A stretch of 53,688 nucleotides of DNA from Carpediemonas membranifera BICM (Eukaryota; Protista; Fornicata), in contig JAHDYR010000057.1 of assembly GCA_019828565.1 (NCBI GenBank), positions 1-53,688 on the forward strand, in the 5' to 3' direction. A program made the translations under genes and the position numbers. Of this stretch, positions 32,276-51,120 are shown in pieces; the first letter of the stretch is position 1; every line of letters starts with the position of its first letter. Below the pieces are notes generated by a model, which searched no databases, was not told where the DNA came from, and saw only the letters and a list, made by a program, of their open reading frames with translations.

Positions 32276-32470
32276 ATGGGCCGTCTGCTCAGCCTGAGCA
32301 CCGATGGGGTCTGTGTGGCGGTGACGGTTAAGCGAGGCGGCCACTATCGACCACAACATGATGCGAGCATGCCTGTTCGAAAGCGAGCGAGGGGGCGGGA
32401 GAAAGAGCGCCCCCGACTCGGGACCAATAATGCCGATGCTCCGCCCGCGCCGGATCCTGATGCCCACCTC
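32276..32470 (+). pseudogene. Fanzor (TnpB-like) nuclease, N-terminal remnant left of the LTR insertion
   Basis: SLSTDGVCVAV matches the Fanzor1-type 'TDG.sv.v' motif; ends …PDAHL at the CCTC TSD and rejoins 38516 in frame. Confidence 0.8.
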
Positions 32471-32579
32471 TGTGCCTCGCTAATGCGGAGAATGCTTTTA
32501 TATGGAAAGAAGAGAAAACCCTTGTGCCAATAAATGGCTTAAACTGTATAAATGATTAGTGTGGTCTATGACCACCACA
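32471..32579 (-). repeat. 3' LTR of element A (109 bp)
   Basis: Direct repeat of 38400-38511. Confidence 0.95.
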
Positions 32580-33317
32580 CTGCCCCTCCATGCCTGGGTA
32601 ATAGGCATGACACTCAACGAGTTACGGGGGTTAGGTTGGCCTAGGGTCATCCGTGTTATAGTTTGGTGCCACCCAAGCTATGCAACGGTCTACTCCATTG
32701 GCAGTGGAGTGGGCAACGCCCGACCCGCGGTCTTCCGATACGGAATTATGGTATCACCAACGGTGACATGGGAATAAAACCCGACAGCTGTATATGATAA
32801 CGTGGATCCACTGTGTAAGCAATTGCTATGTTACGTGTTAAGATGGTCTTACCAGGGCTTCGCCGCCCTCATGAACCGCATATAGGGTCCGAACTTACCG
32901 ACGTCAATGACAGTCAAACGGACGGCTAGGGTTCGCCCGTATTCATAGAGGCTTATCCCTGCCCCTCCACGGCCTCATATGGCCGTGTTTCGAAAATTAT
33001 TACATGTTACGTAGGCTTCTAACGTAATTCGGGGGTTGATCTTGGCGTCTTCGTCAATAACACGAAGTACTGTACAATTTGCGCTAAAACTTACGTAGAC
33101 GCCGAAAAAGGCATTAATCGGCTCCGAAACGCCTTCGTTGGCGAGTTCTGGGCCTTTCTTTTTTCTTGGCGAGAACGTACTTCAATAACAACATCAGCTG
33201 GCTTCTGATGAAGCTAATAGGCTACAGCACTTGGTAAATAGATGAATTAGCTTGATTTGGCGTTCTATTATTGCTCTAGGTTTCGTCCTTGAGCCGATCG
33301 TTCCAAAAGTGCAGGAT

Positions 33318-34399
33318 ATGTCGTCGTCAACTCAGTTGATGTCGGACAACGCAGCCGTAGAGGCAATTCTGGATACCATTCGCGCGAAAATCGTCGAAAT
33401 TGGTGACGAGGAACTCACCAAGCCTCTTGTTTCCGCCCATTCCGCCGTATGTCGCTCTCTTCGTGCTCAAACACGTACTCAGCGCAAGCGCTTGGCCTCC
33501 GGTAACCTGTAAGTAACAAATATCAATCAACCACTCATCCAGGCACCGTGTACAAGCCGCAGAGCGTGTTACTCGACCCGTGACGGCATCTATGAATCTT
33601 CCCCGCGACATCAGAGCTGAGGTCTCCCGGCGCCTGAATGGCTACAGCAACTCGATTGAAATGCCTCTTCAGCGTATCTTCGACGCCATTGAGCAGGGTC
33701 GCCTCCACGACGCCGCGGTAGTCACCGATGTTAAGAAGTCTCGCCAGATTCTTAACCTCGTGGCTTACTGCCAGTTCGCTCTCGCTGGGGTGGTGACCCA
33801 CCTCAAGATCAAGCTGTGCCCGACGCTCACTGATGGCGATATCGTCTCAGCAGCCCTCCGGAGTGGCGACATCAGCCTGACCGGTAGTGGGCGCTACTCT
33901 GCCGGGCTCGTGGCCGCAGTTCGCGCTGCTGCCGGTGTCACGTCGGATACCACGGCTCGCGGATACCTCAACCGCCTGCTGATCCTCGTCCTCTCGCCCG
34001 ATTACTTCCGAGTGGCACTCTTCGGGATCAGCCGCTGCATCTCAGCTCCCAGCGCCTTCTGGGCGACCCTGGTCGACGAGCTGTGTCGCGAGGGTCACCT
34101 GCCTGCGATCGGTGACGAGGTCCACTGGGAGCCTATTCAGGTCTCGGACCCGGACCGTTACTACACCGTGACGTGTGTTGTCCGTCATGAATTCCTCAAA
34201 ACGACTCGTGGACCTGGGACCTTCGCTCTCATACTCCAGTATGAGGGGTTACTCTGGCCTCAGCATCGTCTGGCTGAACGCCGATCTCTGTCTCGTCCGT
34301 TGTGTGCGCGACTATCTTGCTGAGCACGATCTTGAGCGCCACGCTGACGCGTCTTGGTTGGTCGAGCTGACCGATACCGAGGAGTCGGACGACGAATAA
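33318..34399 (+). CDS. Antisense accessory gene inside element A (~348 aa after splicing 33509-33542 and correcting one extra G at 34245-34248); chromodomain-like C-terminus
   Basis: A GTAAGT…CCAG 34-nt intron joins ORF 33252-33512 to 33580-34323 in frame. The C-terminal part reads YTVTCVVRH…LILQYEG/YSGLSIVWLNADL…VRDYL, then an acidic tail. Confidence 0.7.
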
Positions 34400-34441
34400 A
34401 TCTGATGACTTGACGCTGGAGCGATTAGATGTGGTGAAGAT

Positions 34442-37400
34442 TTATAGACCGTCCAGTTTGGCTTGGTCAGACTTCAAATATATATCTAATGCTTCCAGGT
34501 CCTTGACGGAGTCCCAATCCTGCCATGTCGCCTCCTCGTCCTCGAAACCAGACCAGTGAACGCGGTATTCGCGTTTGGTTCGTGTTCCGTTCCCTCGCGA
34601 TTTGGAAATACGGTCCACTTCCCACTCATCGTTCGCCGTGGCGGCCAAGTCCTTGATCTCTCGCTCGGATAGATTGCCAGGGTTAAATCTGCGTACGCGC
34701 GAGGCGTCGACCTTCAATATCTTGCCTTGGCTTCCCTGGTTGAGGTCCTGAACTTCATAGGCGACCGTCACGCCATCTTGCTTAACCGCACTGACCCGTC
34801 GCATGGGCCCTCGCCATCCTGGCATCAGCTTGTTGGGAGGTCTGGCTGGGTACTTGACCAACACGAACCGGCACAGTAACTCCTGACGTGACGATGCGGC
34901 GTTTGCGAGAGCGTCCTCTCTCATTGCCTGAATTCTAGCCTTCGCTAGCTGGATGGCTTGGCCAGCCGCCGCGCGTCTGTCCTGTATTCTGGCGCTAGTC
35001 GAGTGGGTGCAGATGATGATCTCGTTCGGGATCCTGATGTTGACACCTAGTATGATCTCGGATGGTGAGAGGTGAGTGGGTATCCTGGGCGTCGAATTGA
35101 CGATAAATTGTGCGACAGGTAAGTGCTTGACCCAGTCCGCGTCCCGGAAATGGAACTTTCTGGCCTTCAAGATTTTGAGAACTCCACTGTTGGCCCGTTC
35201 GACGATGCCATTAGATTGCGGGTGATGTGGAGTCGTAACATGGGTGTGGAAACCCATCTCGTCGGCCAGGGACTTCATGAGCTGATTGTTAAACTCGGGC
35301 CCGCCGTCAGTCTGTAAGACCTCGGGGCAGCCATAGCGTAAGACCCAGTTATTAACGAACGCCGTAACTGCGGCTTGCGCAGTCGTACCTGTAACTGGAA
35401 CCAACTCGGTCCACCTACTACACATATCTATGATGACGGAGATGTGCGTGAACCCCTGCGACTTGGGGAACGGACCTAAGGTGTCGATGGCTACTCGCTT
35501 AAACGGTTCATCAACGGCGGTATGCAGACCATCCGGTGTATCGACGTGGGGTCTCTCGAGGACTTGGCACACCGGGCAAGCTGCAATCACCTGGTCGACT
35601 GCGGCTCTCGACACCGACAACCCTTCGGCTCTAAGCTTCTCGGTCGTTAGTCGTCGAGATAGATGGGCGCCGGCGGTGGTGTGTGCTTCTTCAATCTCAT
35701 CGGTCGTAGCTTTGCGAGTGAACATAGTAAACACACGGGACAGACCATCTGCGGCTCCATTGTCCAGGCCGGCGACGTGCTTAATCTCAAAGTCCAAGTC
35801 GGAAATGGCATCGGCCCACCTCCTGACTTTCGGGTTGATGCTACGGTACATGAAGGTAAGGTTTCGGTGGTCAGTGAGTATGGAGAAAGGTCCCCAGGCA
35901 AGGAACTTGCGCCAGCGCTGCAAGGCCGCCACAATGGCGTACGCCTCCTTCTCAATCGTTGACCAACGAGACTGTGTGGCGTTGAAGGCCTTCGACATGT
36001 AACAGACAGGCTTGCCCTCTTGCAATAGGACTGCGCCGTACCCCACTCCCGAGGCGTCGGTCATTATAGAATGCTCCTTCGTGGCGTCGAAAATTGCTAG
36101 GGCGTCAGCGGAGGTAAGGTTCTGCTTGAGCTTATCGAGGGCCTCCTGCTGGGCGGTCAGGCCGAGACTTGTGTGACCGGACATAGCTTTGATTAACGGG
36201 TGTCCGATTTCCGCAAAATGGGGGATGTGATCCCGGAAATAGTTGAGGAATCCTACTAGGCCCTGCATGCCCTTGATGGATGTCGGCATCTGGAGATTTG
36301 CGATGTCGTCTACACGGCTGGGTGCGATGCTCACCTGCCCATCATTGACAACCCAACCTAAGAACTCGACCTCCTGCCTGCCGAATTAGCATTTCTCGCG
36401 ATTGAGCTGGAGCTTGACCTTACGCGCACGGTCCAGGACTCTTTCGAGGTTCGCGAGATATTCGGCCTCGTCGCTGCCGAAGACAATAATATCGTCGATG
36501 TAAATGTAACATGAGCTGCCCACGAGCCCGGCGAAGGCGCGCTCCATGGCCTTCTGGAAGTGAGCTCCTGCGTTGCGCAGCCCGAAAGGCATCCGTCGGT
36601 ATTGATACTGCCCTAGTACGGTGGTAAATGCAGTCAGGGGTCTTGATCGTTCTGTCAAAGGGATCTGGTGGTACCCGGACGACAGGTCTAGAGTCGCGAA
36701 GATCTTCTGTCCTGCGAGCTGTGACAGCACCTCGTCGATACGAGGGATGGGGTAGTCGAACGGCTCAGTAAGCTCGTTAATACGGCGGAAATCGACTACG
36801 AAACGCGACTTGCCTCCCTTCTTAGGCACAGTCATAGCTGGGGAAGCGTATTGTGACTGGCAGGCCTCGATATATTTCTTGGCTAGCAGCGTGTCGATGT
36901 GCTCTCTCACGACGTGTATCTTCGCTGGGGGTACATAGTAAGGTCTGGCGTTCACGACCCGATCGTCCTTCAGAACGAGGTCGTACGGCTCTAGCCTGCT
37001 AGGTTCGTCCCGGTCTTGGAATAGATCGGAGAACCTCTTGATCAGTTCGGCTTGACTCTTGGTCGACTGGTCGGATAGACTAAAAATGGCAGCGTTGTGC
37101 TTGAAAGCTTCGGGGACCTGGACTTCGTCCGAGTCTTCCCCTGACTCTACGTTCACGTCGGGGAGGATTCCCAGCTCGACAAGGTGGGGGTACCCCAGGA
37201 CGACGTCGAACTCAGTATCTAGCACAATCAACTCCGGCTTGAAGGACACTGCCTTAGGTGTAAAGGCTGACGGCATGAGTTTGATGTTCCCTTGCACGGA
37301 ACCTTGGGACTGTATAGTTCCCTTGGCTGTACGCACGCTTCGCTCTTCATCTGATATACGCGTCATACCCTTGGTCAGCTTGGGGGATATAGTGGAGCAG

Positions 37401-38379
37401 TTGGCTCCCCGAATCAATCAAGGCAACGACGTCTCGACCCTCGACCTTAACTTTGCACAGAGGTAGGCTATCTTTGCGTTTGTGTGAAGTCATCGAGAAC
37501 AAGGACAAGTACTGTGGGGATTTACAGAACCTGTCAAGGTGTCCGCTCTTCCCGCACTTCTGACACTTGTTCTTGGGCTTCTTACACTCGTAGACGGCGT
37601 GACCCTTACCACCACAGTTATAGCAAATGAACTGTGAATGATCACGTCTGCCCTTCTTGTCGATAGGCTTAGTCGACGCGTGTTCAGGTCTGGTAGCATG
37701 CGAACGGTCTTCGGTGGGACGTGACTGAGGCTTGCGATCGTTGCGTCGGTGGGAGTTACGGCTCGTGTGGTGGTGCTCGGCGTTGGACGGCTTGTCCTGG
37801 AACGCGTTGGCGATCGCGGTGCTCTCTTGGACTGTTCTGGATAGGGCTAGAACGCGCGGCATGGCATCTTCTAGCGACATGTCCTGGATCACCTCCTTGA
37901 TGCGGTACATCGTCTGGTTGGATCCGAACTTGGAAACAACGAACGTATATGTCGCGTAGTGTCTCGAGGGGGAACTCGGGTTGGACGACTGCCATGGTAA
38001 TACGGAACTTCTTGTTGACTCGAGCAACTTCGATAGGGGAGAAGTCCTTGGCGGTGATTCTAAAGAGACGGAGCTTGTTGACTTCTTGAGTAGGTCTGAG
38101 AGCGCGTCCTAGGCGCTTGATGATCTTGAGGTCCTTCTGGGCTCTGGAGCGAGCGGCACGATGATGTTGATTAAGGAGGAGAGGGATCTCTTCCTCCGCG
38201 TCGTCAAGATCGTCCGCTGGTAGGATTGCTGTCACCATCTCCCGAACCTCGCTGTCGATTAGCTTCTCAATGTCTCGCTTGCCCCCTAAGGCGCGGTAAT
38301 CGTTGAACTTGTCCACAAAGATGAACAGTTCGTTCAGATCTGGCGACTTCAGCAACGGGGGATCGGATTTCTTCAGCAT
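34442..38379 (-). pseudogene. gag-pol of element A (two CCHC knuckles, protease, RT, RNase H, integrase, chromodomain); two frameshifts and one in-frame TAA as assembled
   Basis: CYNCGGKGHAVYEC, CQKCGKSGHLDRFC, ALIDSG, LDLSSGYHQI, YIDD, TDASG, TDHRNL, DGGPEF, SNGIVERAN, PGWRGP, WEVDRI…VHWSGF…TWQ. TAA at 36386-36388. Confidence 0.95.
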
Positions 38380-38399
38380 TTGAGGGGAATTAACGTTAA

Positions 38400-38511
38400 T
38401 GTGCCTCGCTAATGCGGAGAATGCTTTTATAGGGAAAGAAGAAGAGAAAACCCTTGTGCCAATAAATGGCTTAAACTGTATAAATGATTAGTGTGGTCTA
38501 TGACCACCACA
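38400..38511 (-). repeat. 5' LTR of element A (112 bp)
   Basis: Direct repeat of 32471-32579; gag ATG 20 nt downstream on the minus strand. Confidence 0.95.
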
Positions 38512-38515
38512 CCTC

Positions 38516-39334
38516 ATGGGGTTCGACCCGGGCGCAAGGTCCATCGGAGGGTATTACATCAGGCACCCCGATGGCACCACCAGCACCGGCGTCCTTCCAA
38601 AGTGCGGATACACTAAGACGCCAAGTTTCGGCTTTGATATGACGGCCGCGTCGTTCAAGAGCACAAGACTAGTGAGTATCAACAACTCTATTAGGTTTGT
38701 GCTGGACAACGCGAACGACATTTTCGAGGCTGGAATGCGTAAGTCTTTCCGCCGAGTGCGCTTTGCGAACCACATCCTTCGCCAGAAGCACTTCGCCCGC
38801 TGCGGCCAACAGTTGGCTCGGGAGTTCGGTTGGCGTCGCCACCATCCCATCGCCACCCCCATTCGCCTGAAAGTCTTCTACGGGAGCTCGGGATTCACCA
38901 CGCCTGCTGGTATGTTCATTCCTTGCGCGCCATATCGAAAGTTCGCGAGAGAGATTGTTCCCCTTCTCAAGGGGTATAACATTGTCGTCGATCTTAACAT
39001 GGTTAACGAGGATCGCACAACCGTCGTCTGCCCTCACTGCCACGCCCCCTACAAGCGAGTTCGTCCGCGTGATGACCAGCACGTTCACCCACATCGTGTG
39101 ATGCTCTGCGAAAATCCACAGTGCCGTGGTGCTCAGTGGCGCGCAACAGTTCCTGATGCTCTGAATGTTGATCATCGGGACAAGAGTGCTGCAGAGAACA
39201 TCTTGTGGCGTTCTCTTGCCACGGAAGATGAGCTCGGTGGCTCTCCGTTCAGTCGCACCTCGATCCCACGTCTTCAAACATCATTCCAGTATCATCAATT
39301 GGCTAACCGCCAACATTCGTCTACGGACGGATGA
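38516..39334 (+). CDS. Fanzor (TnpB/Cas12-related RNA-guided nuclease), RuvC/zinc-finger portion
   Basis: RuvC-I GFDPG; FRRVRFANHILRQK helix; VFYGSSGF; RuvC-II VNEDRTTVVCPHC; HRVMLCENPQC; RuvC-III HRDKSAAENI; terminal PFSR. Confidence 0.9.
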   Translation: MGFDPGARSIGGYYIRHPDGTTSTGVLPKCGYTKTPSFGFDMTAASFKSTRLVSINNSIRFVLDNANDIFEAGMRKSFRRVRFANHILRQKHFARCGQQLAREFGWRRHHPIATPIRLKVFYGSSGFTTPAGMFIPCAPYRKFAREIVPLLKGYNIVVDLNMVNEDRTTVVCPHCHAPYKRVRPRDDQHVHPHRVMLCENPQCRGAQWRATVPDALNVDHRDKSAAENILWRSLATEDELGGSPFSRTSIPRLQTSFQYHQLANRQHSSTDG

Positions 39335-39397
39335 TGTTGTGCAGTTTGGCACTTTGATCGTTCCCTGTCTGGGAGGTTCGAAAAATGTGTTTATACT
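39301..39397 (+). ncRNA. Candidate Fanzor omegaRNA scaffold
   Basis: Hairpin CAACATTCGTC-TACG-GACGGATGATGTTG (cUACGg tetraloop) overlapping the Fanzor stop codon, at the position expected for an omegaRNA. Boundaries uncertain. Confidence 0.4.
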
Positions 39398-39487
39398 CAA
39401 TTTATACACGCTCACGTAAACATCAGCAAAACCGCGCCCCGCGCGGCATGAGGTGACTTGTTGCCTGGTTAGATGGCCGCCGAAGCA

Positions 39488-40695
39488 GCCCCTGTCGGTT
39501 GAAATCATTTACAGTAAACCGCAGCGGGGTAAAAGTGGTCAAAACTGGACGGAGCAGTTTATAGACCGGTGACACTACCTCCCTTTTTGATGAGAAAACC
39601 CCCAACCTGCAAGGAACGGGGGAAAAAGATGGTTAGTAGAGTTTCAGGTTCTTCCTCGCCTTACGGGCCAACCTCTTCATCTCCTCGAGGTGTTTCACTC
39701 CCGAGAGTGGTTCTTCCGTTATGTTTTCGAATCCTACCCACTTGATGGCGGCTGTCCCTTCTTTCCAGTCTACCGATACTACTCGCTCTACCTCCCATTT
39801 TTTCTGGTCGAAGCTTGCAAGTTGAAGCATCATCGTGTCCGTTACGGCATCCGTGTCGAACATCATGAGTTTTTCAATGTGGGTTGATCTGGTCGATCCG
39901 TCGAGTATCGACTGCAGGACTATTCTGTTATTATCAAGTACATCGTGTACCTTCCATGGGCCCCTGTCGGTTGAAATCATTTACAGTAAACCGCAGCGGG
40001 GTAAAAGTGGTCAAAACTGGACGGAGCAGTTTATAGACCGGTGACACTACCTCCCTTTTTGATGAGAAAACCCCCAACCTGCAAGGAACGGGGGAAAAAG
40101 ATGGTTAGTAGAGTTTCAGGTTCTTCCTCGCCTTACGGGCCAACCTCTTCATCTCCTCGAGGTGTTTCACTCCCGAGAGTGGTTCTTCCGTTATGTTTTC
40201 GAATCCTACCCACTTGATGGCGGCTGTCCCTTCTTTCCAGTCTACCGATACTACTCGCTCTACCTCCCATTTTTTCTGGTCGAAGCTTGCAAGTTGAAGC
40301 ATCATCGTGTCCGTTACGGCATCCGTGTCGAACATCATGAGTTTTTCAATGTGGGTTGATCTGGTCGATCCGTCGAGTATCGACTGCAGGACTATTCTGT
40401 TATTATCAAGTACATCGTGTACCTTCCATGGGCCCCTGTCGGTTGAAATCATTTACAGTAAACCGCAGCGGGGTAAAAGTGGTCAAAACTGGACGGAGCA
40501 GTTTATAGACCGGTGACACTACCTCCCTTTTTGATGAGAAAACCCCCAACCTGCAAGGAACGGGGGAAAAAGATGGTTAGTAGAGTTTCAGGTTCTTCCT
40601 CGCCTTACGGGCCAACCTCTTCATCTCCTCGAGGTGTTTCACTCCCGAGAGTGGTTCTTCCGTTATGTTTTCGAATCCTACCCACTTGATGGCGG
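39488..40695 (-). repeat. 472-bp tandem repeat (~2.6 apparently identical copies) of the 3' end of element C: integrase tail + chromodomain + PPT + 82-bp LTR
   Basis: Units start at 39488, 39960 and 40432. They encode RGPWKV…WEVERVV…IKWVGF. PPT AAAAAGGGAGGTAG precedes a TGTC…GACA LTR at 39493-39574, 39965-40046 and 40437-40518. Confidence 0.92.
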
Positions 40696-43600
40696 TGTGA
40701 CCCTAAACTGCGGGAGTTGGTTGCATAAAACTCATTCGTAACACGGCACAATATCGATATTACCGGTGAAATGAAGCAATTCACGACTAATGATCCAGAA
40801 AGCGCAATCCAGGCGCTCGCGGATTACACCACTGCAATTATCCACGAGAGAAACCCAACTTCTTTCATCCAAACGCTCACAGCGGACACGGTCGCGAAGT
40901 TAAAGCGTGATTGGCGTCCGACAGCGAAATTTCCCACTCTTGAGAGCCTCCAGACCTCCATTATGTCTGACGCCGAAGCCCGAGCTCAGGCCCGTTCGGA
41001 CGAGGCTCCGCAAGCTATATCCCACAATCCCACCGCAGATGCAATCGCCAAGCGTTTCGCTGCTGCCTTTGAGGCGGCCTGCAAGCGAGCGCAGTACGCA
41101 GAGTGTGTGCGGGTCTCTTCAAACTTCAAGGACCCGGCCCTCACCAGCCTGACAAAGGAGTCAATCTCGGCAGAGATACAACGCGCAATCCCGGAGGCCA
41201 CTGAGAAGGCCAGGACATTCATCACCTCGTACATGAAGGACCCCGCGGCCAACAGATGGTCCGACCTCTTCAGCGCCGCAACCCCGACTGTCCCCGTGCC
41301 TGACGGGACCGACATGACACTCCCAGATTTCTCTGACAAGGTCCCGGAGCCCACCATAGATGAGAAGCCCGACCTGGCCGCCTGGCCAAAGCGTGCTGAT
41401 TTCCCCGACGTTTACGCTTACCTCCGCGCCGAGGCAAAGGCGATCATCCCCTACATCGTTTATACGCTCCTACCGACCCTCGACATGGGATCGAGACTGA
41501 AGATGGTGCGCGACAAGGCATCCGGCCTTAGATTCTTCGGCCCAGCCGTCGAGCACCGACTCGCCGTCTTCAAGCTACGTAGGATCCTCAACGCTTACGA
41601 TCCATGCGTCCCAGACATCGAGGCACTAACCTACAACTCGACCGAGCGCTTACTGGGGTCGATCTTCCTCAAGGGCTATAGCAAGGACGCCGAGGCTCTT
41701 TACGAGGACATCATCGAGGACCCAGCCGAGTCAATCGACGATCTTCTTTCTCGCCTCGAGAACCTCGACGTCGATCACGACGAACGCGTTATTGTCCCGT
41801 GGCGGGCGTTCGCGGTAACATCCCAACCCGCCGACCAGAAAGACAGCGGCCGTCGCGCCCCTGGCAAGCAAAAAGCCGACAGTACTGCCCCATACAAGCG
41901 ATCCCTATCTCCAGTTCAAAGACAAGCACAAGTATGCCATCCCACAGCACTTCAACAAGTGGTGCAAGTCTCATGGGTGGATCAGTAACCATACGACAGA
42001 GTCATGCAGGTTCCTCGCACGGCAGAAGGACAACCAGTCCAAGGGCACCTCCGGCTCCTCTCAGCCGCGGAAGAACGACCAGAAGCAGACCAGCGGTACG
42101 CAGTCCGACCGTCGGGCCGGCAACATGTTCCTGAGGGACTCCTCAAAGCTTCGCAACTCGCGCGGCCAGCGCGACGTCCATGAAGTCGACAACAACGCCT
42201 CAGATGACGCCGAGTCCGAGGACGAAGGTGACGTCTATGAGGTGGGGGCTGTTGAGATCGACAACGACCCCATCAACGTCCCGGCCACGATCAACGGTGT
42301 CCAAATCAAGACGAAGTTCGATATCGGAGCCTGCGTCTCAGTCATCTCGGAGCCCGCACTAGCGAAGGTCCCGAATTACCAGCTCATCGACACCTCAGTC
42401 GAGCTCTTCGGCGCCGGCGACGAGGTCATCTCCATCGGTAAGGCCGCAAAGGTCGACATCACTCTCCCGTCTATCGATGGCAAGACCGTGCAGGCCACCG
42501 CATTGCTGATGGTGATCCGCGCCAAACGCCGAAAGGTCCTGATCGGCCGCGACCTCCTCAGAAGGTTGGGCTACCTCATGAACGACAGACTGCTGATCCC
42601 GTCATCCGCCACCATCTCCGACAACGACAATCTGCCTCCACACCCGTATCTCGACTCCTGCACAGATGAGATTGATGTTGATAACGAGTGGAAGAAGGTC
42701 CGAATCCCTTACGATGACAATCCAGACCTCACTAAGTGGCTCGAAGGCTTCCTATACGAACGCCGCGAGCTCTTCGGCGAGCTGCCAGAGGACGGCAGCG
42801 AGTTGCGTCCACACAAGATCACCCTGAAGCCTGGCGACCACAGGCTCCAGAAGGCAAGACCACGCCCCCTTAAGGGTTCCCAAGCGTCCAGCGCCGCCGC
42901 TGAAATCGACAAGATGCTCCAACAATTAGTCATCCGCCCAAGTGACTCGCCGTACTCATCCCCACACGTGATGGCGAAGAAGAAGAACGGTGAGGACAGG
43001 TTCTGCGTCGCGTATAACGTTCTGAATGAAGCCACCGAAGACGATCGCTACCCGACACCAGATATCCGCTCCTTCGTCCATGAGGCAAGCGGCTGCTCAC
43101 TCTTCGGCACGCTCGACCTCCGAAGCGGCTACTGGCAGCAACGTATGGACCCCGACAGCGTCTCACTCACCGCCTTCACTATCCCAGGCGGTCATTACGA
43201 GTTTCTTCGTACCCCCTTCGGGCTCAAGAATGCCCCGGCCAAGTTCCAGAGAGCGATGGACGAGGTGTTGGAAGACTGCAAGAGCTCCAAAGCCTACGTC
43301 GACGATATCTTCACTTACTCGCACACGGAGGAAGAGTTCAAGAGCGCCATCACGGATCTCTTCGATCATCTACTGGCGGCCAACGTCAGACTGAAGGCCG
43401 ACAAGTGTGCCCTCGGCCTCTCCGAGGTTGAGGTGTGCGGCTTCATCGTTAACGAGATGGGCAGATCCGTTGCCCCCGCTCGAGTCCAGGCCATCCGCGA
43501 CCTCTTTCCTCCGACCACCACGTCGGAACTCCGTCGATCCCTCGGCAAGTTCAACTACTTGTCGAATTACATTCCCCATCTCGCCGACGCCGCAGCACCT

Positions 43601-45560
43601 CTCAACCGGCTGCTTAAGGGCTCTCCGGGGAAGTCGTCCCCCGTGGCCTGGGGCGCCGAGCAGGACGCCGCTTTCGCTAAGATGAAAGACCTGGTCACCG
43701 AACACACGGCGCTCGCCCTCCCAGACTTAGACAAGCCCTGGACCTTGGAGACCGATGCCTCCTCAGTAGCGATCGGCGGGGTCCTCTGGCAGGGCGAAGG
43801 AGTTGAGAAGGTTCCCCTCGCTTTTTATTCCAAGACCTTGGACGAGACTCAGCAAAGGTGGTCGACCGTCGAACAGGAGCTTTACGCGATCATCCACTGT
43901 GTAACTCGACCGGAGTTCTCAGCCCTCCTTAAGATTAAGCCGTTCTCTCTCAGAACCGATCACCGGAACCTTATTTGGCTCCTGAGAAAGACGGACGAGG
44001 AGGGCACGAAAAAGCTTACTCGCTGGCGCCTGACAATGACCGAATACCCCTACTCCATCGCCCACATCAAGGGCGTCCACAATGTCGTCGCCGACTCGCT
44101 GTCCCGTCCTAGCAGCGTCCCAGAGGACCGAGACGACCTCAAGGCCGCTATCGAACAGGTCTCCAGTTCTCACCGTCACCTCATCAACCAGGCCCACGCC
44201 GGTGCACAGGGCCACGTCAGCGTCGCTCAGACGATGGAAAATCTCCGCAACGCCGGGCAGTCTTGGCCCGACATGAAATCGGACGTCCGGGGAGACCCTC
44301 AGAAGTTGCGCCGTCTGCCAGAAGGTTAGACCCCCTGCCCGCGAGAAGACGAAGTGGCACTCCACGCAGCGACTCAAGCCCTTCGAGACGGTCCAGCTTG
44401 ACACAATAGGCCCCCTTCCGGAAGAGGCCGGCATGTCCTACATCATCACGATCGTGGATGTCTTCTCCAAGTTCACGATCCTCCGTCCGGTCGCTACTAC
44501 AAAGGCCGAAGAGGCTGCAGCAGCGATGCTGGATGTGTGGTCCACGTTCGGAGTCCCAAAGGAGATTCAAACCGACCAGGGCACTCAATTCCGTAACGCC
44601 CTCATTGCCGAGTGTAACGCCATCATCAGTCTTCAGCACAGGTTCTCAACCCCTTACCATCCGGCCAGCAACGGAGTCGTTGAACGACTCAACGGCACGA
44701 TCATGTCTCGCATGAGAGCGCTCCTCCTAGACGCAGAGGACGGCAACTGGCCCGCCTATTTACCGCTCGCTCAACACGTCATCAACTCTACCCGCCACGC
44801 CACCACCGGTCGCTCCCCTTTCGAACTGCTGTTCGGCAAAGAATCGACGCTACGGGTCGCCCCGATCGCTCTGGCAAACGCCACGAAGAGCTGCACCCCT
44901 GGGAGCGTTGATGAAGGTGAGATTGTCCGCTTCCAGGAGGACGTAGCCGCTCTACAAGCCCTCGCCCGCGTCAAGATTCGCGCGTACGAGGCGCGCAAGG
45001 CCAAGGCCACAGCAGACACTCATGCGTGGGAGAGAGAACAATACGTTCTCCTGCGCTACCCGGGCAAGCCCCCGGCTAAGATCTACACCCCCCTGCGCGG
45101 ACCCTTCCGCATGGAGGGGAAGGGCGAACACCCGAACACCTACCGCGTCCGTGACCTCGTCACAAGATGCGTCAGCACGGTCCACGCCGACAGACTGGTC
45201 CGATTCGAGACCGATTTATCCGACACCGAGCTCGAGCGGATCGCCGCTTTCGAGCAAGGCGAACAGCCCGTCAAGGAGATCGTCGGTCACAAGAAGAAGA
45301 AGAACGGCTCATTGGAGCTCCTCATCCGTTGGGAAGGCCTCACACCCGACGAAGACTCCTATGTACCCTATAACCGGTACTATGACCAGCTAGCGGCTCT
45401 CGATGATTACCTCGTCGCTCATCCAGAGCATGAAGCCGCGTTCGCCGCCGCCAAGAAGAAGTTCCGCAGTTCCGGGCGCCGTTAATGCGTCCGCATGGGG
45501 GGAAGTGTGACCCTAAACTGCGGGAGTTGGTTGCATAAAACTCATTCGTAACACGGCACA
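40696..45560 (+). mobile_element. Element B: full-length Ty3/Gypsy chromovirus with identical 55-bp LTRs; no TSD
   Basis: TGTGACCCTAAACTGCGGGAGTTGGTTGCATAAAACTCATTCGTAACACGGCACA at 40696-40750 and 45506-45560; PPT GGGGGGAAG at 45497-45505; flanks GGCGG / GTTCG differ. Confidence 0.95.
40771..45485 (+). CDS. gag-pol of element B (CHHC knuckle, protease, RT, RNase H, integrase, chromodomain); two 1-nt frameshifts as assembled (~41870-41895, ~44290)
   Basis: WCKSHGWISNHTTESC lies in the pol frame; FDIGA, LDLRSGYWQ, YVDD, ETDAS, TDHRNL, TDQGTQF, SNGVVERLN, RGPF, VKEIVGH…IRWEGL. Confidence 0.93.
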
Positions 45561-46059
45561 GTTCGAAGTTATCTCACATGACCAGGATATCTACACGTTG
45601 AAGAATCCTGCCGATGAGAAGCCGTTGAAGTTTCATATTTCCCGCTTGCTGCCTTATACCTCTCCCGAAGTACCTGTAGACGATGTTACGTTGGTTGCCC
45701 TGGATTCTGACGAATATCCAGTTGAAAAGATCGTTGCACACCGCAAGGGAAAGACGAAGTCTCGTTGGCAGTTTAAGGTCCGTTGGGATGGCTATGGCCT
45801 GGGAAGGCAAATTCGGGTCCGGGGTCAGATACCAAGCAATCTTAAATTTCTTTCTTTCTTTCTTTCGGATGGCTATGGCCCCGACGACGATCAGTGGCTC
45901 GCGTACCACGATGTGAAGGACCTCAAGGCCCTGGATGAGTATTTGGAGGCTCATCAGGAGCTTCGCCTTTAGGTGGGAAGTGTCGTGCAGTTTAAGGTTA
46001 TGGTCTGCGAACCCAACCTGCGAACCCAATAAACACAGCATCAACCAACTGCTTTAACA
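45561..46059 (+). mobile_element. Element D: 3' remnant of another chromovirus (integrase tail, chromodomain, PPT, ~79-bp LTR at 45981-46059)
   Basis: FHISRLLPY, EYPVEKIVAHR…FKVRWDGYG/PDDDQW; stop at 45972; purine-rich tract AGGTGGGAAG followed by TGT…ACA. Confidence 0.8.
45800..45866 (+). mobile_element. 67-bp retroposed insertion (5'-truncated LINE/SINE-like) with (TTTC)5 tail and 14-bp TSD
   Basis: GGATGGCTATGGCC at 45786-45799 and 45867-45880 flanks an insert ending in TTTC x5. Confidence 0.8.
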
Positions 46060-47820
46060 TGGAACATTGCCACAACGGTCGAGTCGTCTGTCTGGTGTTT
46101 GATGAGTGTGTCATGGTAGCGGGAGTCAATCGTGATGGCTGCGACAGTGGGCGAGGTCGAGTGACCGCAGCGGCTCAGCGCGTCTGCGACTGCGTTCTGT
46201 GTTGAGAGGTTTGAGGATTCGTGATGAGTCCGGGACGAACTGGGCGACATAGTTGAATGATCCCAGTGTCCTCTGAAGCTCCTTTGCGGTGGACGGGAGC
46301 GGTATGGCGTTTACCGCCTCTACCTTCTCTGGGGCAAGTTGTTTCCCCTTCTCCGAGACAATATACCCGACGGCCTCGACGTGGGCTGAGCCTATCGTGC
46401 ACTTCGGGCCTTTAAGGCGCAGTGAATAATGTCTACAGATCCTGAAGACGGTTTTGATCAGGGTGAGAAACTGGGCCTCGGTCTTGGCGTAAATCAAGAT
46501 GTCGTCAAGATAGATGTCCACCCCTTTGTGGAGGACCTCGGCGAACGCCTTCTGCATGGCGCGTTGGAATCTCGCCGGGGCGTTCATCAGGCCGAATGGA
46601 CATCTGGTGAACTCGCAGTATGCGTCTGGAGTGACAAAAGCGGTTTTGGGGATATCTTCCTCGTGCATCCGCATCTGGTAGTAGCCTTGTCTGAGGTCTA
46701 GGCCTGCAAAGTATTTGCAGCCTGATGCTCGGTCTACAAACTCGCGCGTGTTAGGCAGGGGGAAGTTATCCCTCACTGTCTTGGAGTTTAACTCCTTGTA
46801 GTCAATGCAAAGACGGATCTTGGTCGATCCTTTGTGGCCCTGCCTGACTACTACGATCGGCGAGCTGTACGGCCCAGTCGAGTCCTGGATTATCCCGTCT
46901 CGCCTGAGTTGTTCTAGCTCTGTCGACACCAGGCCTTGGGTCACTGGGTCGAGTCTGCGAGCGCGGCATTGTACAATTGCCCGCTCGTCTATCAGTTCAA
47001 TCGACATGGGTTCCAGTCGAGACCCTTCCTTGGGTAGTTCTTCCTCGAAGATATCGTCAAATGAGTTGATTATCTCGAGAATCTCGGGTCGGATCTTCGA
47101 CTCCGGGACGTGGACACCACAGTAGTCGTCGGTTATCGCCATGTTTGCGTCCTCCGTGAGATATTCATGGTAGAACGGCAGCCAGTCCTCGTCCTCCTCA
47201 ATTGAGGAGAGCTTGTGCAGGTTAAGGTTGAGTGTGCCATCGCCAATGAGTGCGAGTGACCTCAGCAAGTCACACCCGATGAGAGCCTTGAAGAACTCAC
47301 CGGGGAGTACGTAGTACTTCCATGTAACCTCCAACGGTGTGACACCTAGTGCTGGGAATGCTGCCTTAAATGTGACTGCTTGATCTGTCACGAGGGAGCG
47401 TCCGTCTCCTAGCGTGACCTTGATCTTTTCCTCGAGAGAGGTCTGCACTGTGTCCTTGGGTAGGGTACGTAGTGCCTTCGAACTAATGAAGCTTCGGCTT
47501 GCACCAGTGTCTACAACGAACGAGTAAGTTTTGCCTTTTACAGTAGCGGGGGTCGTCAGTGGACCCTTCCCGCCCTTCTCGTTAGTCGACGCGCTGTCGG
47601 CGTTGTTGTTCTCGCTGTAGCGGGGGTGCTTATCGCATCTGAAGTCCATGTGGGGACCGCCACAGAAACGACAGGGGCGCGACGGCTTCTTGGGTCCGTC
47701 GGCCGGCGGGCGCTTGGCCGCGTCCGGGCGGTACTGGGCCTTCCTGGCCTGGGCCGGGGCCTTGGGTCCGCCGGCCGGGGTTTGCGAGAGGGGTTGATCA
47801 TGGTCATACGCCCTACATAC
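46060..47820 (-). mobile_element. Element E: internal Ty3/Gypsy fragment (gag tail, protease, RT; RNase H mostly deleted)
   Basis: CRFCGGPHMDFRC, VVDTGAS, LDLRQGYYQM, YLDD. The sequence jumps from LKPL to QNAVADALSR and is truncated on both sides. Confidence 0.88.
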
Positions 47821-48072
47821 TGTCAACATCCCTAGATTATCTTTGCTAAACCCTAGATTATCTTCGACCTCAAAACGCTAGATAATCTACAATTTCTTGC
47901 TCAGAAATGAAGTATTCATTAAATTTAAGCTATTTAGAGATAAACGAAGGTCTTCTTTAGAGTCCATATGATGTACGTAGAGCATGGAAAGAAGCTCTGG
48001 CTCTGACTCCTTGCCTGGTTTGAGCATTTCGCCGTGCAGGTTAAGACGAAACGATAAAATGGACAATAACAG

Positions 48073-48176
48073 AAAATCTAACAGGTAGATTCACTACGAT
48101 AGTGATTATGTGAGTAGTTGAAAGGAGGTACATATGCGCATAATCACTTTCAGAGTGAATCTACCTGTTAGATTTT
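48073..48176. repeat. Long hairpin: perfect 23-bp inverted repeat enclosing a second 10-bp stem
   Basis: AAAATCTAACAGGTAGATTCACT (48073-48095) / AGTGAATCTACCTGTTAGATTTT (48154-48176); inner AGTGATTATG (48101-48110) / CATAATCACT (48139-48148). Confidence 0.9.
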
Positions 48177-49754
48177 GAGATATGGTCGATTTCTTGTTTT
48201 TTGACTTGGCTAGAGTCGAATTGAAGAAAAGGAGAGGCTATTACTCAGGGAATATTGCTCGTCAAAGAAAAGCAAGCAAGGCCGCGAGGTATGGCCACCC
48301 GACCTACAAGATGGGCTGGGTGACATCGCGTAAGGACGACTGGTCTTGCGCGGTCAACGCTGACAAAACTTAGCGATTCAGAGAAATAAATGGCGCCACC
48401 GTATTCAGCACAAGGCAGTGAACTCAGCTATATGTTTTTTTCTCAGTATATTTACCCAGCGGCTGATCCCACAGTTTAAGGACGGGTATTAGCCTGCACT
48501 TTGCATGAAAAAATTATGCCTGAACACGACCAATTATCCAAAACACAGCATTTAGCATGCAACAGGAGCTGGAAGCAGCTGCAACATCTATTCTAGGCCA
48601 TTCCACAACCATTACGCAAGAAATTGACGCAATAGAGGCCATTCAGTCCCATTACTTCATAGATTCACGCTTGAACGATATTACGAGCCTTATCAGGCGA
48701 GAAACAAGAAAGCTGAACGCGATTGGTGACTCCTTTCTCGCTGAGACATATGCAGCATACTGACAGCCACGACACGCTGTTCAAGCAGATTTAAGGGAGC
48801 GCCATCACCAAACACGTAAATAGACCTGTATACGACAACCAGAGACGGACGTATGAGTCAGAACGGTGTGCTACCGGAATACGCAGGGTGTTTTGTGCCC
48901 TGTTGATTCCAGGAGCACGCTGCTCTGGGCCACGTGAGATACCGCGAGACTAAATCCGATCTTTACTATCTCTTACATATGCAAATATCATGAGTGTGTC
49001 CCTGCTCGTGAATGGGAACATCCAGCCAGTCTGAGTCAAAGCTACGGTCTGCTTTCGACAAGACAGTGCGCCATAGGCCGTTGACTAAACACCATGTGCA
49101 GCTTTTGGCACTCAGTCGACCTCTGTTTGAAGGTCAAGTGGATGGTCTATGGAAGAAGGTGTTGAGGTAGGGCTCGTGTTTGACGGGCAATGAGGAAGGA
49201 GAGATCTCACTGGATGTGTGCATCTGCGGCAAGTATGAGTAAAGAATGAAAACATGATTGGTAGTTATAGATCGCGAGAATAGGCATTCTCATCTGCATT
49301 GCGGAGAAAAGGAGTTGATGTTGTATTAAGAAAAGGACGAATGCATTATCAGCCATTTGAATGCATGGCTCCAAACTACACGCGTTTTGGCGTTGATATT
49401 GATTATTAAATGCACTGTTGGTAGCCTATTGAGGGATTTCGTCACTGTACTCGAATGCACAAGTGTGCATTTTATGCTCGCAACGAGACTGAAATGGCGA
49501 ACTGACGAATAGAAAGAATACGCTGCAAAAGGGGGCACAATGCGCTCAGAGAGCGATACTGCCGACAGTATCGTCTTTTCCTTCATCTGACATTGTAAAG
49601 AGGAAGAGTTTATGATTGGAGCATAGCTGATGTCCATAAACACCATTCATAAGCCAGTCCTGGCTTGTTTTCCACTGCTACTTCTCTCGTTGCGACGCAC
49701 AGCTAGCTGTCGCGAAATGCACTTTAAGACCAATTTTCACACAGCTACCTGTGC

Positions 49755-50308: not shown

Positions 50309-51120
50309 ACCGCCCATTTTTGACGTATGAGATCAGTATCCCATGCCAAACCTCAGGACGGCATTGTGTACCTTGTCCTGCCCTGTATCCATTAGATAAC
50401 CACCCACTTTCCTTTCACAATGTGCATTTTATGCTCGCAACGAGACCGAAATGAGGATCTTAAGAATAGAAAGAATACTGGCGGCTTTAACGTAGTAGGC
50501 ATGCACATATCACTAAGAAACATCAGTAAGCGAGCGCAGAGCATCATTAAAGCAACAATTATCCCTAAACAACATCAACAACTATAAGTCCACTAGGACC
50601 ATACGATATGAACTATAAATGAACCACAGAGCAGTATAGATGATTTGAGAGTACCAGGCATGGCCAGAATACCGCAATACTCGCCCGTTGATCCACGTGA
50701 CCTCCATCTTGGTCGGTATCCAGAGAACGCCCGTCAGACGCTTGCAACGGAACATTTAGGGGTGCATCCTGAATAGGGCCAGATTTGAGGGACCCTTGGT
50801 CTGATATGTCATGACCGAGTTCTCTAGGGGCCTCCACAGTGCGTCCCGAGGTACGTTAGAGCACCACAGACCTTCCCCCAAAAGCTGACTCCTGGACCCC
50901 TTGGCCGGAGCTCGCCCGAAGCGTGCCTCGGCTTGAACTAACGGCAAGAGAGCATAAAATCAGCCCTTTCGAACCGTGTTTTTATGCTCTGCTGCCGTTA
51001 TAGAATTATTCAAAGGGCCCTCTCTTTGCGCTTTTTTTCTGGTTCGTGGGACGAAGTAGGGACGGACAAAAAGCACATACGGAAGGTATTGGAGGTACTG
51101 AGGCCGCCCTAGGTACATAG

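What the first reader, a model, noticed from the sequence alone, without database searches (positions are those of the whole stretch)
38380..40770. Two different LTR retrotransposons replace the tRNA primer-binding site with a perfect 12-bp palindrome: candidate tRNA-independent priming system
Seen: immediately after the 5' LTR, element A has ATTAACGTTAAT (38389-38400) and element B has AATATCGATATT (40750-40761). Both are perfect, AT-rich, CG-centred 12-mers. Both include the terminal A of the LTR, and in both the gag ATG lies exactly 20 nt past the LTR. The elements have unrelated LTRs and gag proteins and the palindromes differ in sequence, so symmetry and spacing are conserved rather than sequence. 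Neither has the TGG start of a tRNA-CCA PBS, and I found no complement in the LTRs. Established: Ty3/Gypsy elements normally prime with a host tRNA, and Tf1/sushi-type chromoviruses self-prime by pairing the PBS with the transcript 5' end followed by RNase H cleavage. Inference: a self-complementary PBS would let two genomic RNAs pair and one, once cleaved, prime the other, or it could serve as a dimerisation signal. I do not know whether this has been described.
Basis: partly seen in the sequence, partly recalled or inferred. Interest (0 to 1): 0.9.

Follow-up and report, generated by a model that had tools for sequence, protein, structure and literature searches.

The report
Palindromic primer site in gypsy retrotransposons
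Two unrelated gypsy-type jumping genes of the protist Carpediemonas membranifera, like every relative whose 5' end I could define, carry a perfect self-complementary 10-14-base sequence exactly where such elements normally bind a host tRNA. They therefore probably start DNA copying on a paired second copy of their own RNA, a route that is untested and has one unexplained precedent in fungal copia elements.

Summary
Element A (minus strand, 32471-38511, 112-nt LTR) and element B (plus strand, 40696-45560, 55-nt LTR) are chromodomain Ty3/gypsy elements. Their gag proteins and LTRs are unalignable and their RT-RNase H is 36% identical. Each has a perfect 12-nt palindrome that starts on the last A of the 5' LTR.

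Chance is about 1e-7 for the pair. The same holds for all 16 families I could score: 10 in this genome and 6 in a second, unnamed assembly. Their palindromes are 10-14 nt, all Watson-Crick, differ between families, and change symmetrically between sister families.

None has a TGG start. Neither palindrome lies in any of the 63 tRNA genes scored. I found no Tf1-like complement in the LTR and no GalEa-like downstream partner.

Best reading: a tRNA-independent primer or dimer site that works by pairing two element RNAs. The priming step itself is inferred, and no RNA data were available. The shared 20-nt spacing to the ATG is not general; the range is 9-22 nt.

A similar site was described, unexplained, in fungal GalEa copia elements in 2017. 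This scan has already reported the same phenomenon on other DNA of this genome at least ten times.

The parts
32471..38511 (-). Element A, a full-length chromovirus (gag with zinc knuckle, RT, RNase H, integrase, chromodomain). This copy has frameshifts in gag and at the gag/protease boundary.
   Evidence: Pfam domains. LTR pair. GAGG duplication at 38512-38515 and 32467-32470. 5 of 11 other copies are open for 1,500 nt or more from the palindrome, whereas this copy is split into three frames.
38400..38511 (-). 5' LTR of A (112 nt, TGTGG...GGCACA), with a TAAA-containing motif 30 nt before its end
32471..32580 (-). 3' LTR of A (110 nt), preceded by a purine tract
38389..38400 (-). Palindrome of A, ATTAACGTTAAT. 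Its first base is the last A of the LTR.
   Evidence: It is identical in all 12 full 5' ends fetched. It occurs at 23 genome sites, 20 of them inside A-family matches.
37756..38379 (-). gag start of A; the ATG at 38379-38377 follows 20 nt after the LTR
40696..45560 (+). Element B, a chromovirus (gag; protease-RT-RNase H; integrase-chromodomain, in three frames)
   Evidence: Pfam domains; LTR pair. The two flanks do not form a target duplication.
40696..40750 (+). 5' LTR of B, only 55 nt (TGTGACC...GGCACA), with TAAA at 40726-40729
   Evidence: (12 copies with different flanks start at the same base)
45506..45560 (+). 3' LTR of B, identical to the 5' LTR and preceded by a purine tract
40750..40761 (+). 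Palindrome of B, AATATCGATATT. Its first base is the last A of the LTR.
   Evidence: It occurs at 44 genome sites, 15 of them in B-family matches. It is kept exactly in a relative that is only 81% identical (C33).
40771..41988 (+). gag of B; the ATG follows 20 nt after the LTR

Best explanation
The palindrome is the element's minus-strand primer site, and it works without a host tRNA. Because it is self-complementary, the leaders of two copies of the element RNA pair through it, giving a duplex of 10-14 bp. One RNA, once cut, supplies the 3'-OH that reverse transcriptase extends on the other RNA. This is a trans version of Tf1-type self-priming.

Shown:
- position at the LTR edge
- perfect Watson-Crick symmetry in every family
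- sequences that differ between families and change symmetrically
- no tRNA partner and no partner in the LTR

Inferred:
- that the pairing is RNA with RNA
- that a cut occurs
- that DNA synthesis starts there

My preferred detail, also inferred, is that the cut falls at the centre of the palindrome. The left arm, which includes the last 1-3 bases of the LTR, would be the primer, and the right arm would be the site it binds. Plus-strand synthesis would then rebuild the right arm from the primer's left arm in each cycle. Integrase would trim the 4-5 extra bases left beyond CA.

This detail would explain two features: why all 100 pairs are Watson-Crick with no G-U, and why the palindrome always reaches into the LTR.
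For: - All 16 scored families have a perfect palindrome of 10-14 nt that starts 1-3 nt inside the LTR end. Thirteen of them were found without regard to palindromes, by LTR pairs or by gag homology.
- The families are deeply diverged: 35-40% identity in RT-RNase H, with terminal branches of about 1 substitution per site.
- Sister families differ by paired changes. F6 and F4 differ at positions 3/10 and 6/7. B and C differ at 5/8 and 6/7. F5 is F6 with a central AT insertion.
- The B palindrome is unchanged in a relative that is 81% identical.
- Predicted homodimer duplex energies are -9 to -22 kcal/mol. Monomer folds of the leaders are no better than shuffles (z -1.3 and +0.46).
- No family has TGG within 10 nt of the LTR.
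- Neither palindrome lies in any of the 63 tRNA genes scored.
- A host primer would itself have to contain each palindrome. That would need more than ten different host RNAs (inference).
- A generic Ty3/gypsy relative analysed with the same script shows a canonical TGGCGACC site 3 nt after its LTR.
- The leaders are too short to hold another site: 9-22 nt lie between the LTR and the ATG in 15 of the 16 families.
Against: - No experiment or read data show a transcript start, an RNA dimer, a cut or a cDNA 5' end. The only runs found were three tiny contig sets that barely cover B.
- If the whole palindrome were the primer, the last 1-3 LTR bases would have to survive as ribonucleotides after primer removal.
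- In the centre-cut version, each arm alone pairs over only 5-7 bp.
- An RNA-cutting activity on an RNA-RNA duplex is known only for Tf1 (my own knowledge, not tested here).
- Five of the 20 fetched loci, and the fourth element in the window (46126-47829), had no definable 5' end and could not be scored.
- Only 63 of 497 tRNA candidates were scored.
Confidence: 0.45

Rival explanations
1. The palindrome is only a dimer-linkage or packaging signal for the genomic RNA, like a retroviral dimer initiation site. Reverse transcription would be primed by something else not yet recognised, such as a tRNA fragment pairing inside gag, or the RNA's 3' end.
For: Self-complementarity is what dimer sites have. 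The predicted homodimers are stable. Nothing here shows priming. MMTV has a palindrome inside its PBS that serves dimerisation (my own knowledge; the relevant paper appears in the list but I did not read it).
Against: The site sits exactly at the LTR edge in all 16 families and overlaps the LTR by 1-3 nt. A dimer site has no reason to do that. No other candidate PBS exists: there is no TGG, and 9-22 nt after the LTR the ATG follows in 15 of the 16 families. It is not presented in the loop of a stem-loop as retroviral sites are. The absence of any G-U among 100 pairs is unusual for a helix kept by selection on RNA alone (inference).
Confidence: 0.25
2. The palindrome acts as DNA. It could be a symmetric binding site for a dimeric protein (integrase or a host factor), a cruciform, or the core promoter or initiator of the element.
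For: The palindromes are 74% A+T in a genome of about 57% G+C. Every LTR has a TAAA motif 19-56 nt upstream of its end, against a host background of 0.0013 per nt. If that motif is a TATA box, transcription would start near the palindrome. Strict Watson-Crick symmetry fits a DNA-level signal.
Against: The sequence differs in almost every family within one host, so a single sequence-specific protein is unlikely. Ten host-gene upstream regions in the window show no such palindrome. A promoter element need not be perfectly symmetric or abut the LTR end. In half of the A copies the TATAAAAG motif reads TGTAAAAG instead.
Confidence: 0.12
3. Classical Tf1/sushi-type intramolecular self-priming: the 5' end of the transcript, inside the LTR, folds back on the site.
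For: The elements are chromoviruses, and that group includes the Tf1/sushi self-primers (PMC6317226). In A, a 7-nt stretch at -13..-7 can pair with the right arm if one G-U is allowed.
Against: Across 16 families, pairing between the last 40 nt of the LTR and the palindrome is no better than for shuffled LTRs (summed energy -68.5 against -76.3 kcal/mol; P = 0.85).
Confidence: 0.03
4. Chance, or an artefact of how LTR ends were called.
For: None beyond the fact that perfect 12-mers occur about 16 times in the window.
Against: The probability is about 3e-4 per position, yet 16 of 16 families have one at the same position. The LTR ends are fixed by target duplications and by many copies with different flanks.
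Confidence: 0.001

Closest known systems
Conserved Hairpin Site of fungal GalEa (Ty1/copia) retrotransposons (Donnart et al. 2017, PMC5445492)
   Same: There is no tRNA PBS. A short sequence right after the 5' LTR is palindromic only when the final A of the LTR is included. It is A/T-rich, 10 nt long, and its mechanism is unknown.
   Different: GalEa belongs to the copia superfamily. Its sequence is nearly the same in 85% of families. It has a second conserved sequence 12-41 nt downstream that pairs with the first to form a hairpin. Here the elements are Ty3/gypsy chromoviruses, the palindromes are 10-14 nt and differ between families, and no downstream partner exists (P = 0.72).
Tf1/sushi self-priming chromoviruses
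   Same: They are chromodomain Ty3/gypsy elements with no TGG site. The primer is thought to be the element's own RNA.
   Different: In Tf1 the first 11 nt of the transcript, inside the LTR, pair with the PBS within one molecule, and the PBS is not palindromic. No such complement exists here, so pairing has to be between two molecules.
Retroviral dimer initiation sites, including the palindrome within the MMTV PBS, and the Ty1 PAL sequences
   Same: They are short self-complementary sequences in the 5' leader that join two genomic RNAs.
   Different: They are usually 6-nt loops of hairpins that lie beside a separate tRNA PBS. Here a 10-14-nt unstructured palindrome occupies the PBS position itself, and no tRNA site is present.
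Dictyostelid Skipper elements (PMC5006619)
   Same: They are chromoviruses that lost the TGG PBS and have no complement in the LTR. [quoted passage not shown]
   Different: Skipper has a polypyrimidine stretch, not a palindrome.

Membership tests
Ty3/gypsy chromovirus | Domain order protease-RT-RNase H-integrase, with a C-terminal chromodomain | tested here: met
   Pfam RVT_1, RT_RNaseH, rve and Chromo in both elements
Ty3/gypsy chromovirus | TG...CA LTRs, a purine tract before the 3' LTR, and a short target duplication | tested here: met
   A has GAGG. Other families have duplications of 4-5 bp. This copy of B has no matching duplication.
tRNA-primed LTR retroelement | A site complementary to a tRNA 3' end (TGG...) within a few nt of the 5' LTR | tested here: not met
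   No TGG in +1..+10 in 16 families. The palindromes of A and B are absent from the 63 tRNA genes scored. The positive control is.
Tf1/sushi self-priming group | A PBS complementary to the transcript's 5' end inside the LTR | tested here: not met
   Pairing of the LTR's last 40 nt with the palindrome is no better than shuffles (P = 0.85). The transcription start itself is unknown.
Tf1/sushi self-priming group | RNase H-dependent cut that frees the primer | not testable with these tools
   Needs biochemistry
Tf1/sushi self-priming group | Phylogenetic placement of RT/integrase within the Tf1/sushi clade | not tested
   No reference sequences for Tf1, sushi, Skipper or DGLT-A could be obtained from the tools
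GalEa-type Conserved Hairpin Site | A post-LTR sequence that is palindromic when the final A of the LTR is included | tested here: met
GalEa-type Conserved Hairpin Site | A second conserved sequence 12-41 nt downstream that pairs with the first | tested here: not met
   Pairing of the palindrome with the next 70 nt equals shuffles (P = 0.72)
Retroviral-type dimer initiation site | A palindrome exposed in the loop of a stable stem-loop, separate from the PBS | tested here: not met
   The leader folds are not better than shuffles, and the palindrome forms only a 4-bp hairpin. It occupies the PBS position.

The most novel reading that the evidence does not exclude
A previously undescribed way to start reverse transcription, used by a whole lineage of miniature-LTR chromoviruses. 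Two genomic RNAs pair through a palindrome that straddles the LTR edge. One is cut at the centre, and its left arm primes on the partner's right arm. The right arm is re-copied from the primer in every cycle, which would explain why the palindrome is always perfect. R plus U5 would be reduced to about 20 nt or less, which would allow LTRs as short as 55 nt.
Probability: 0.3. Interest if true: 0.85.

Novelty: new variant of a known kind. Interest (0 to 1): 0.65.

Why it matters
Almost all LTR retroelements and retroviruses depend on a host tRNA to start DNA synthesis. The only worked-out exception is Tf1. Here a whole, recently active lineage has dropped the tRNA: A and B each have a dozen or more near-identical copies. 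It carries a site that can only pair with itself, in elements with the shortest LTRs I know of (my own knowledge).

If priming does occur on a sister RNA, it would be a second independent solution to primer supply. It would also link genome dimerisation directly to initiation. And it would probably explain the unexplained palindrome of fungal GalEa elements.

The question is directly testable in a culturable, free-living protist or in vitro.

Tried and rejected
- RNA evidence. The look-up of sequencing runs gave only three tiny 2017 contig sets of uncertain type. Laid on B (5,201 letters, within the operators' limit), they cover only 44.9-45.6 kb and show no ends. No transcription start or poly(A) site could be mapped.
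- Relatives by Pol. The best non-Carpediemonas hits to B's Pol are generic Ty3/gypsy at 36-39% identity, some from animals. They are not close relatives, and I used one only as a control. Searching with gag did find true relatives.
- More genome DNA. tRNA sequences and the 29 extra sites of B's palindrome could therefore not be read, and I did not try to obtain those letters another way.
- RT phylogeny against Tf1, Skipper and DGLT-A. This was not run because the tools gave me no reference sequences.
- Organism of assembly GCA_002919055.1. No paper names it. Its elements have no DNA match in this genome. The only flank match is a tRNA at 92% identity. A presumed host gene turned out to be another retroelement.
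- Host-type initiator. Ten host upstream regions show no such palindrome.
- Rfam. No family matches in 38000-41200.
- Unprocessed cDNA ends. I looked for 3' LTRs followed by left-arm bases. None of about 18 A-family 3' or solo LTRs extends beyond one base, and the duplications in other families are precise. One F3 copy (L009) has GTATC after its 3' LTR, but a 4-bp duplication explains four of those five bases.
- Fanzor-carrying shell beside A. I saw no clear LTR-plus-palindrome structure and dropped it.
- Complex prediction and the structure tools were not used, because no protein-binding claim is made.
Full report
ANATOMY

The window comes from Carpediemonas membranifera. Pol and gag relatives carry that name in NCBI, and one sits on a contig of 905,863 nt, the length of this genome's contig C67.

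The finding covers the 5' ends of two LTR retrotransposons that face away from each other.
- Element A lies on the minus strand at 32471-38511. Its LTRs are 112 and 110 nt, with one mismatch and a 3-nt indel, and it has a GAGG target duplication.
- Element B lies on the plus strand at 40696-45560. Its two LTRs are identical and only 55 nt long.

Both encode RT, RNase H, integrase and a chromodomain; B also matches an aspartyl protease and A's gag carries a zinc knuckle. They are therefore chromoviruses. Their gag proteins show no similarity. Their LTRs align only over the last six bases, GGCACA. Their RT-RNase H is 36.5% identical.

THE OBSERVATION

On A's strand the LTR ends ...GGCACA and is followed by TTAACGTTAAT. 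In B it ends ...GGCACA and is followed by ATATCGATATT. With the terminal A of the LTR, each forms a perfect 12-nt palindrome (38389-38400 and 40750-40761). In both elements the gag ATG follows 20 nt after the LTR.

The window has 16 perfect palindromes of 12 nt or more in 53,688 nt. That is about 3e-4 per position, close to the random value of 4^-6. Two palindromes at one prescribed position therefore have a probability of about 1e-7.

All 12 full A 5' ends and all 12 B 5' ends that I fetched keep their palindrome unchanged. These are independent insertions with different flanks, 97-100% identical to the window copies.

GENERALITY

The genome has at least 848 candidate RT_RNaseH matches. I fetched 10 kb around 20 high-scoring matches.

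Every element whose 5' LTR could be defined by an LTR pair has a perfect palindrome at the LTR end:
- F1: CATTGAATTCAATG
- F2: AGTAATTACT (the same 10-mer also follows a different LTR, in reverse orientation, in L004)
- F3: AGTATCGATACT
- F4: CAATATATATTG
- F5: CAGTAATATTACTG
- F6: CAGTAATTACTG

A palindrome-first scan added three more:
- Family C: AATACTAGTATT. Its LTR is the one in the window's 472-bp tandem units.
- F7: ACAGTGATCACTGT.
- A further LTR type that carries the F6 sequence.

Searching with B's gag, which evolves fast and so finds only true kin, gave 18 proteins. Several come from an unnamed NCBI assembly, GCA_002919055.1, and from one Logan run. That assembly's elements have no DNA match in this genome, so it is another organism.

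All six of its families also have the feature. Their LTRs, where a repeat pair defines them, are 71-86 nt:
- AATATCGATATT (the same as B)
- AGTATTAATACT
- AGTATCGATACT
- AAGTGATCACTT
- ACAGTTATAACTGT
- ACAGATATATCTGT

In total, 16 of 16 scored families have the palindrome. Thirteen of them were found without regard to palindromes.

As a control, the same script run on a generic Ty3/gypsy relative from elsewhere finds a canonical TGGCGACC site 3 nt after a 730-nt LTR.

Some cases could not be scored. Five of the 20 loci, and the fourth element of the window (46126-47829, minus strand), had no definable 5' end in the DNA I held. I found no counter-example.

HOW IT EVOLVES

The families are old. 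They are 35-40% identical in RT-RNase H, and terminal branches are about one substitution per site. Yet all 100 base pairs in the 16 palindromes are Watson-Crick, with no G-U and no mismatch.

Related families differ by paired changes:
- F6 and F4, sisters with 97/95 support, differ at positions 3/10 and 6/7.
- B and C, in one clade with 98/98 support, differ at 5/8 and 6/7.
- F5 equals F6 with AT inserted at the centre.

A relative of B that is only 81% identical keeps the 12-mer exactly. Symmetry is therefore conserved and sequence is not. That is the signature of nucleic-acid pairing rather than of a protein site.

The palindrome always reaches into the LTR. It includes A in nine families, CA in four and ACA in three. 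One of the nine has an LTR end that is not fixed by a 3' LTR. If the palindrome merely abutted the LTR, each extra base would match with probability 1/4.

WHAT IT IS NOT

- A tRNA site. No family has TGG in the first 10 nt. A partner of a palindrome must contain the same palindrome. A's occurs at 23 genome sites and B's at 44, against zero for the reversed controls. None of these sites lies in any of the 63 tRNA genes scored. Only 63 of 497 candidates were scored. More than ten different palindromes in one host cannot share one host primer (inference).
- A Tf1-type site. Pairing between the last 40 nt of each LTR and the palindrome is no better than with shuffled LTRs (summed energy -68.5 against -76.3 kcal/mol; P = 0.85).
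- A GalEa-type hairpin site. There is no complementary partner in the next 70 nt (P = 0.72).
- A known RNA family.
- A structured hairpin. The leader folds have z-scores of -1.3 and +0.46.
- A host-type promoter motif. Ten host upstream regions lack it.

The shared 20-nt spacing of A and B is not general. Elsewhere 9-22 nt separate the LTR from the ATG.

MOST LIKELY MECHANISM (inferred)

The only strong pairing available is palindrome with palindrome between two molecules, at -9 to -22 kcal/mol. The site sits where minus-strand synthesis must begin, and the leader has no room for another site. I therefore read it as a self-complementary primer site. Two element RNAs pair, one is cut, and its 3'-OH is extended on the other.

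The overlap with the LTR constrains the details. Suppose the whole palindrome were the primer. The first DNA base would then lie 1-3 nt inside the LTR, and the terminal A, CA or ACA of the right-hand LTR would have to survive as ribonucleotides.

A cut at the centre avoids this. The left arm, which includes the LTR end, primes on the partner's right arm. The cDNA then carries 4-5 extra bases beyond CA for integrase to trim. Plus-strand strong-stop synthesis copies the primer's left arm into a new right arm in every cycle, much as a tRNA rewrites a normal PBS. That would keep the palindrome perfect and free of G-U, and it would make changes in the two arms travel together. I could not test any of this.

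A supporting observation concerns the LTRs. Every LTR has a TAAA motif whose last occurrence lies 19-56 nt before the LTR end, against a host background of 0.0013 per nt. Whether this motif is a TATA box or a poly(A) signal, it leaves little room for R plus U5. That fits LTRs of 55-127 nt.

RIVALS

A pure dimer-linkage role is the main rival. A DNA-level role, as a symmetric protein site, cruciform or initiator, comes next. Both are weakened by the fixed position on the LTR edge and by the sequence differences between families. Neither is excluded.

COMPARISON AND NOVELTY

The closest description is the Conserved Hairpin Site of fungal GalEa copia elements. It is a 9-nt sequence that is palindromic when the final A of the 5' LTR is included. 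It replaces the tRNA PBS, and its function is unknown (PMC5445492). It differs in three ways: it belongs to another superfamily, its sequence is nearly constant, and it has a downstream partner.

Tf1/sushi elements self-prime within one molecule (PMC6317226). Skipper elements replaced the PBS with a polypyrimidine tract (PMC5006619).

Full-text searches found no report of a palindromic PBS in Ty3/gypsy and no description of Carpediemonas LTR elements. I therefore class this as a new variant of a known kind.

This scan has already reported the same phenomenon from at least ten other windows of this genome, with the same reading. The present window adds two more families and independent tests.

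LIMITS

- No transcript or cDNA ends were available.
- No reference RT tree was built.
- The identity of the second organism is unknown.

Noticed in passing
window 40690-40700 and 45555-45570: This copy of B has no target duplication. Its left flank is the 472-bp tandem unit (...GGCGG) and its right flank is unrelated (GTTCG...). In public contigs the right flank is preceded by a different sequence (table 7). This suggests a rearrangement between copies or a nested insertion history.
   Followed up: partly
window 39488-40695: There are 2.56 tandem copies of a 472-bp unit. On the minus strand each unit holds the end of an integrase/chromodomain ORF, a purine tract and the 82-nt LTR of family C. 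The units are joined at a GGGGC microhomology, and B cuts the last unit.
   Followed up: partly
window 38516-39334 (+), continuing left of A near 32276-32470: An ORF with CxxC...CxxC and a DHRDKSAAENI-like motif, which looks like the C-terminus of a TnpB/Fanzor nuclease. It appears to be split by the insertion of A. Pfam gave no hit, so the resemblance is from memory and from an earlier scan note only.
   Followed up: no
L010 (G000:C1:900456-910455): Family F3 forms a head-to-tail array of at least three units that share LTRs, with a period of 3,944 nt.
   Followed up: no
all 16 LTRs, e.g. window 38426-38429 (-) and 40726-40729 (+): Every LTR has a TAAA-containing motif 19-56 nt before its end, about 30 nt in most C. 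membranifera families and about 43 nt in the second organism. In family A it is polymorphic, TATAAAAG or TGTAAAAG, in roughly equal numbers of copies. It could be a TATA box, a poly(A) signal or both.
   Followed up: partly
genome G000, 29 sites listed: B's palindrome occurs at 29 sites outside B-family matches, where chance predicts about 1.4. Other families or non-autonomous elements probably use the same 12-mer, as one family in the second organism does (L049).
   Followed up: no
window 37347-38379 (-): The window copy of A is broken: gag and the gag/protease region are split over three frames. 5 of 11 other copies are open for 1,500 nt or more from the palindrome.
   Followed up: yes
window 48080-48170 and 49464-49710: A 16-nt inverted repeat pair surrounds TATGCGCATA at 48133. 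The palindrome ACAGCTAGCTGT at 49699 directly follows ...GCACA, 238 nt after a TGTGCA... repeat that recurs at 50421. These may be degenerate small elements with the same edge palindrome. The region has a low G+C content of 46-51%.
   Followed up: no
L058 5808-5880: In the second organism an element lies about 520 nt from a tRNA gene that is 92% identical to tRNA genes of C. membranifera.
   Followed up: no
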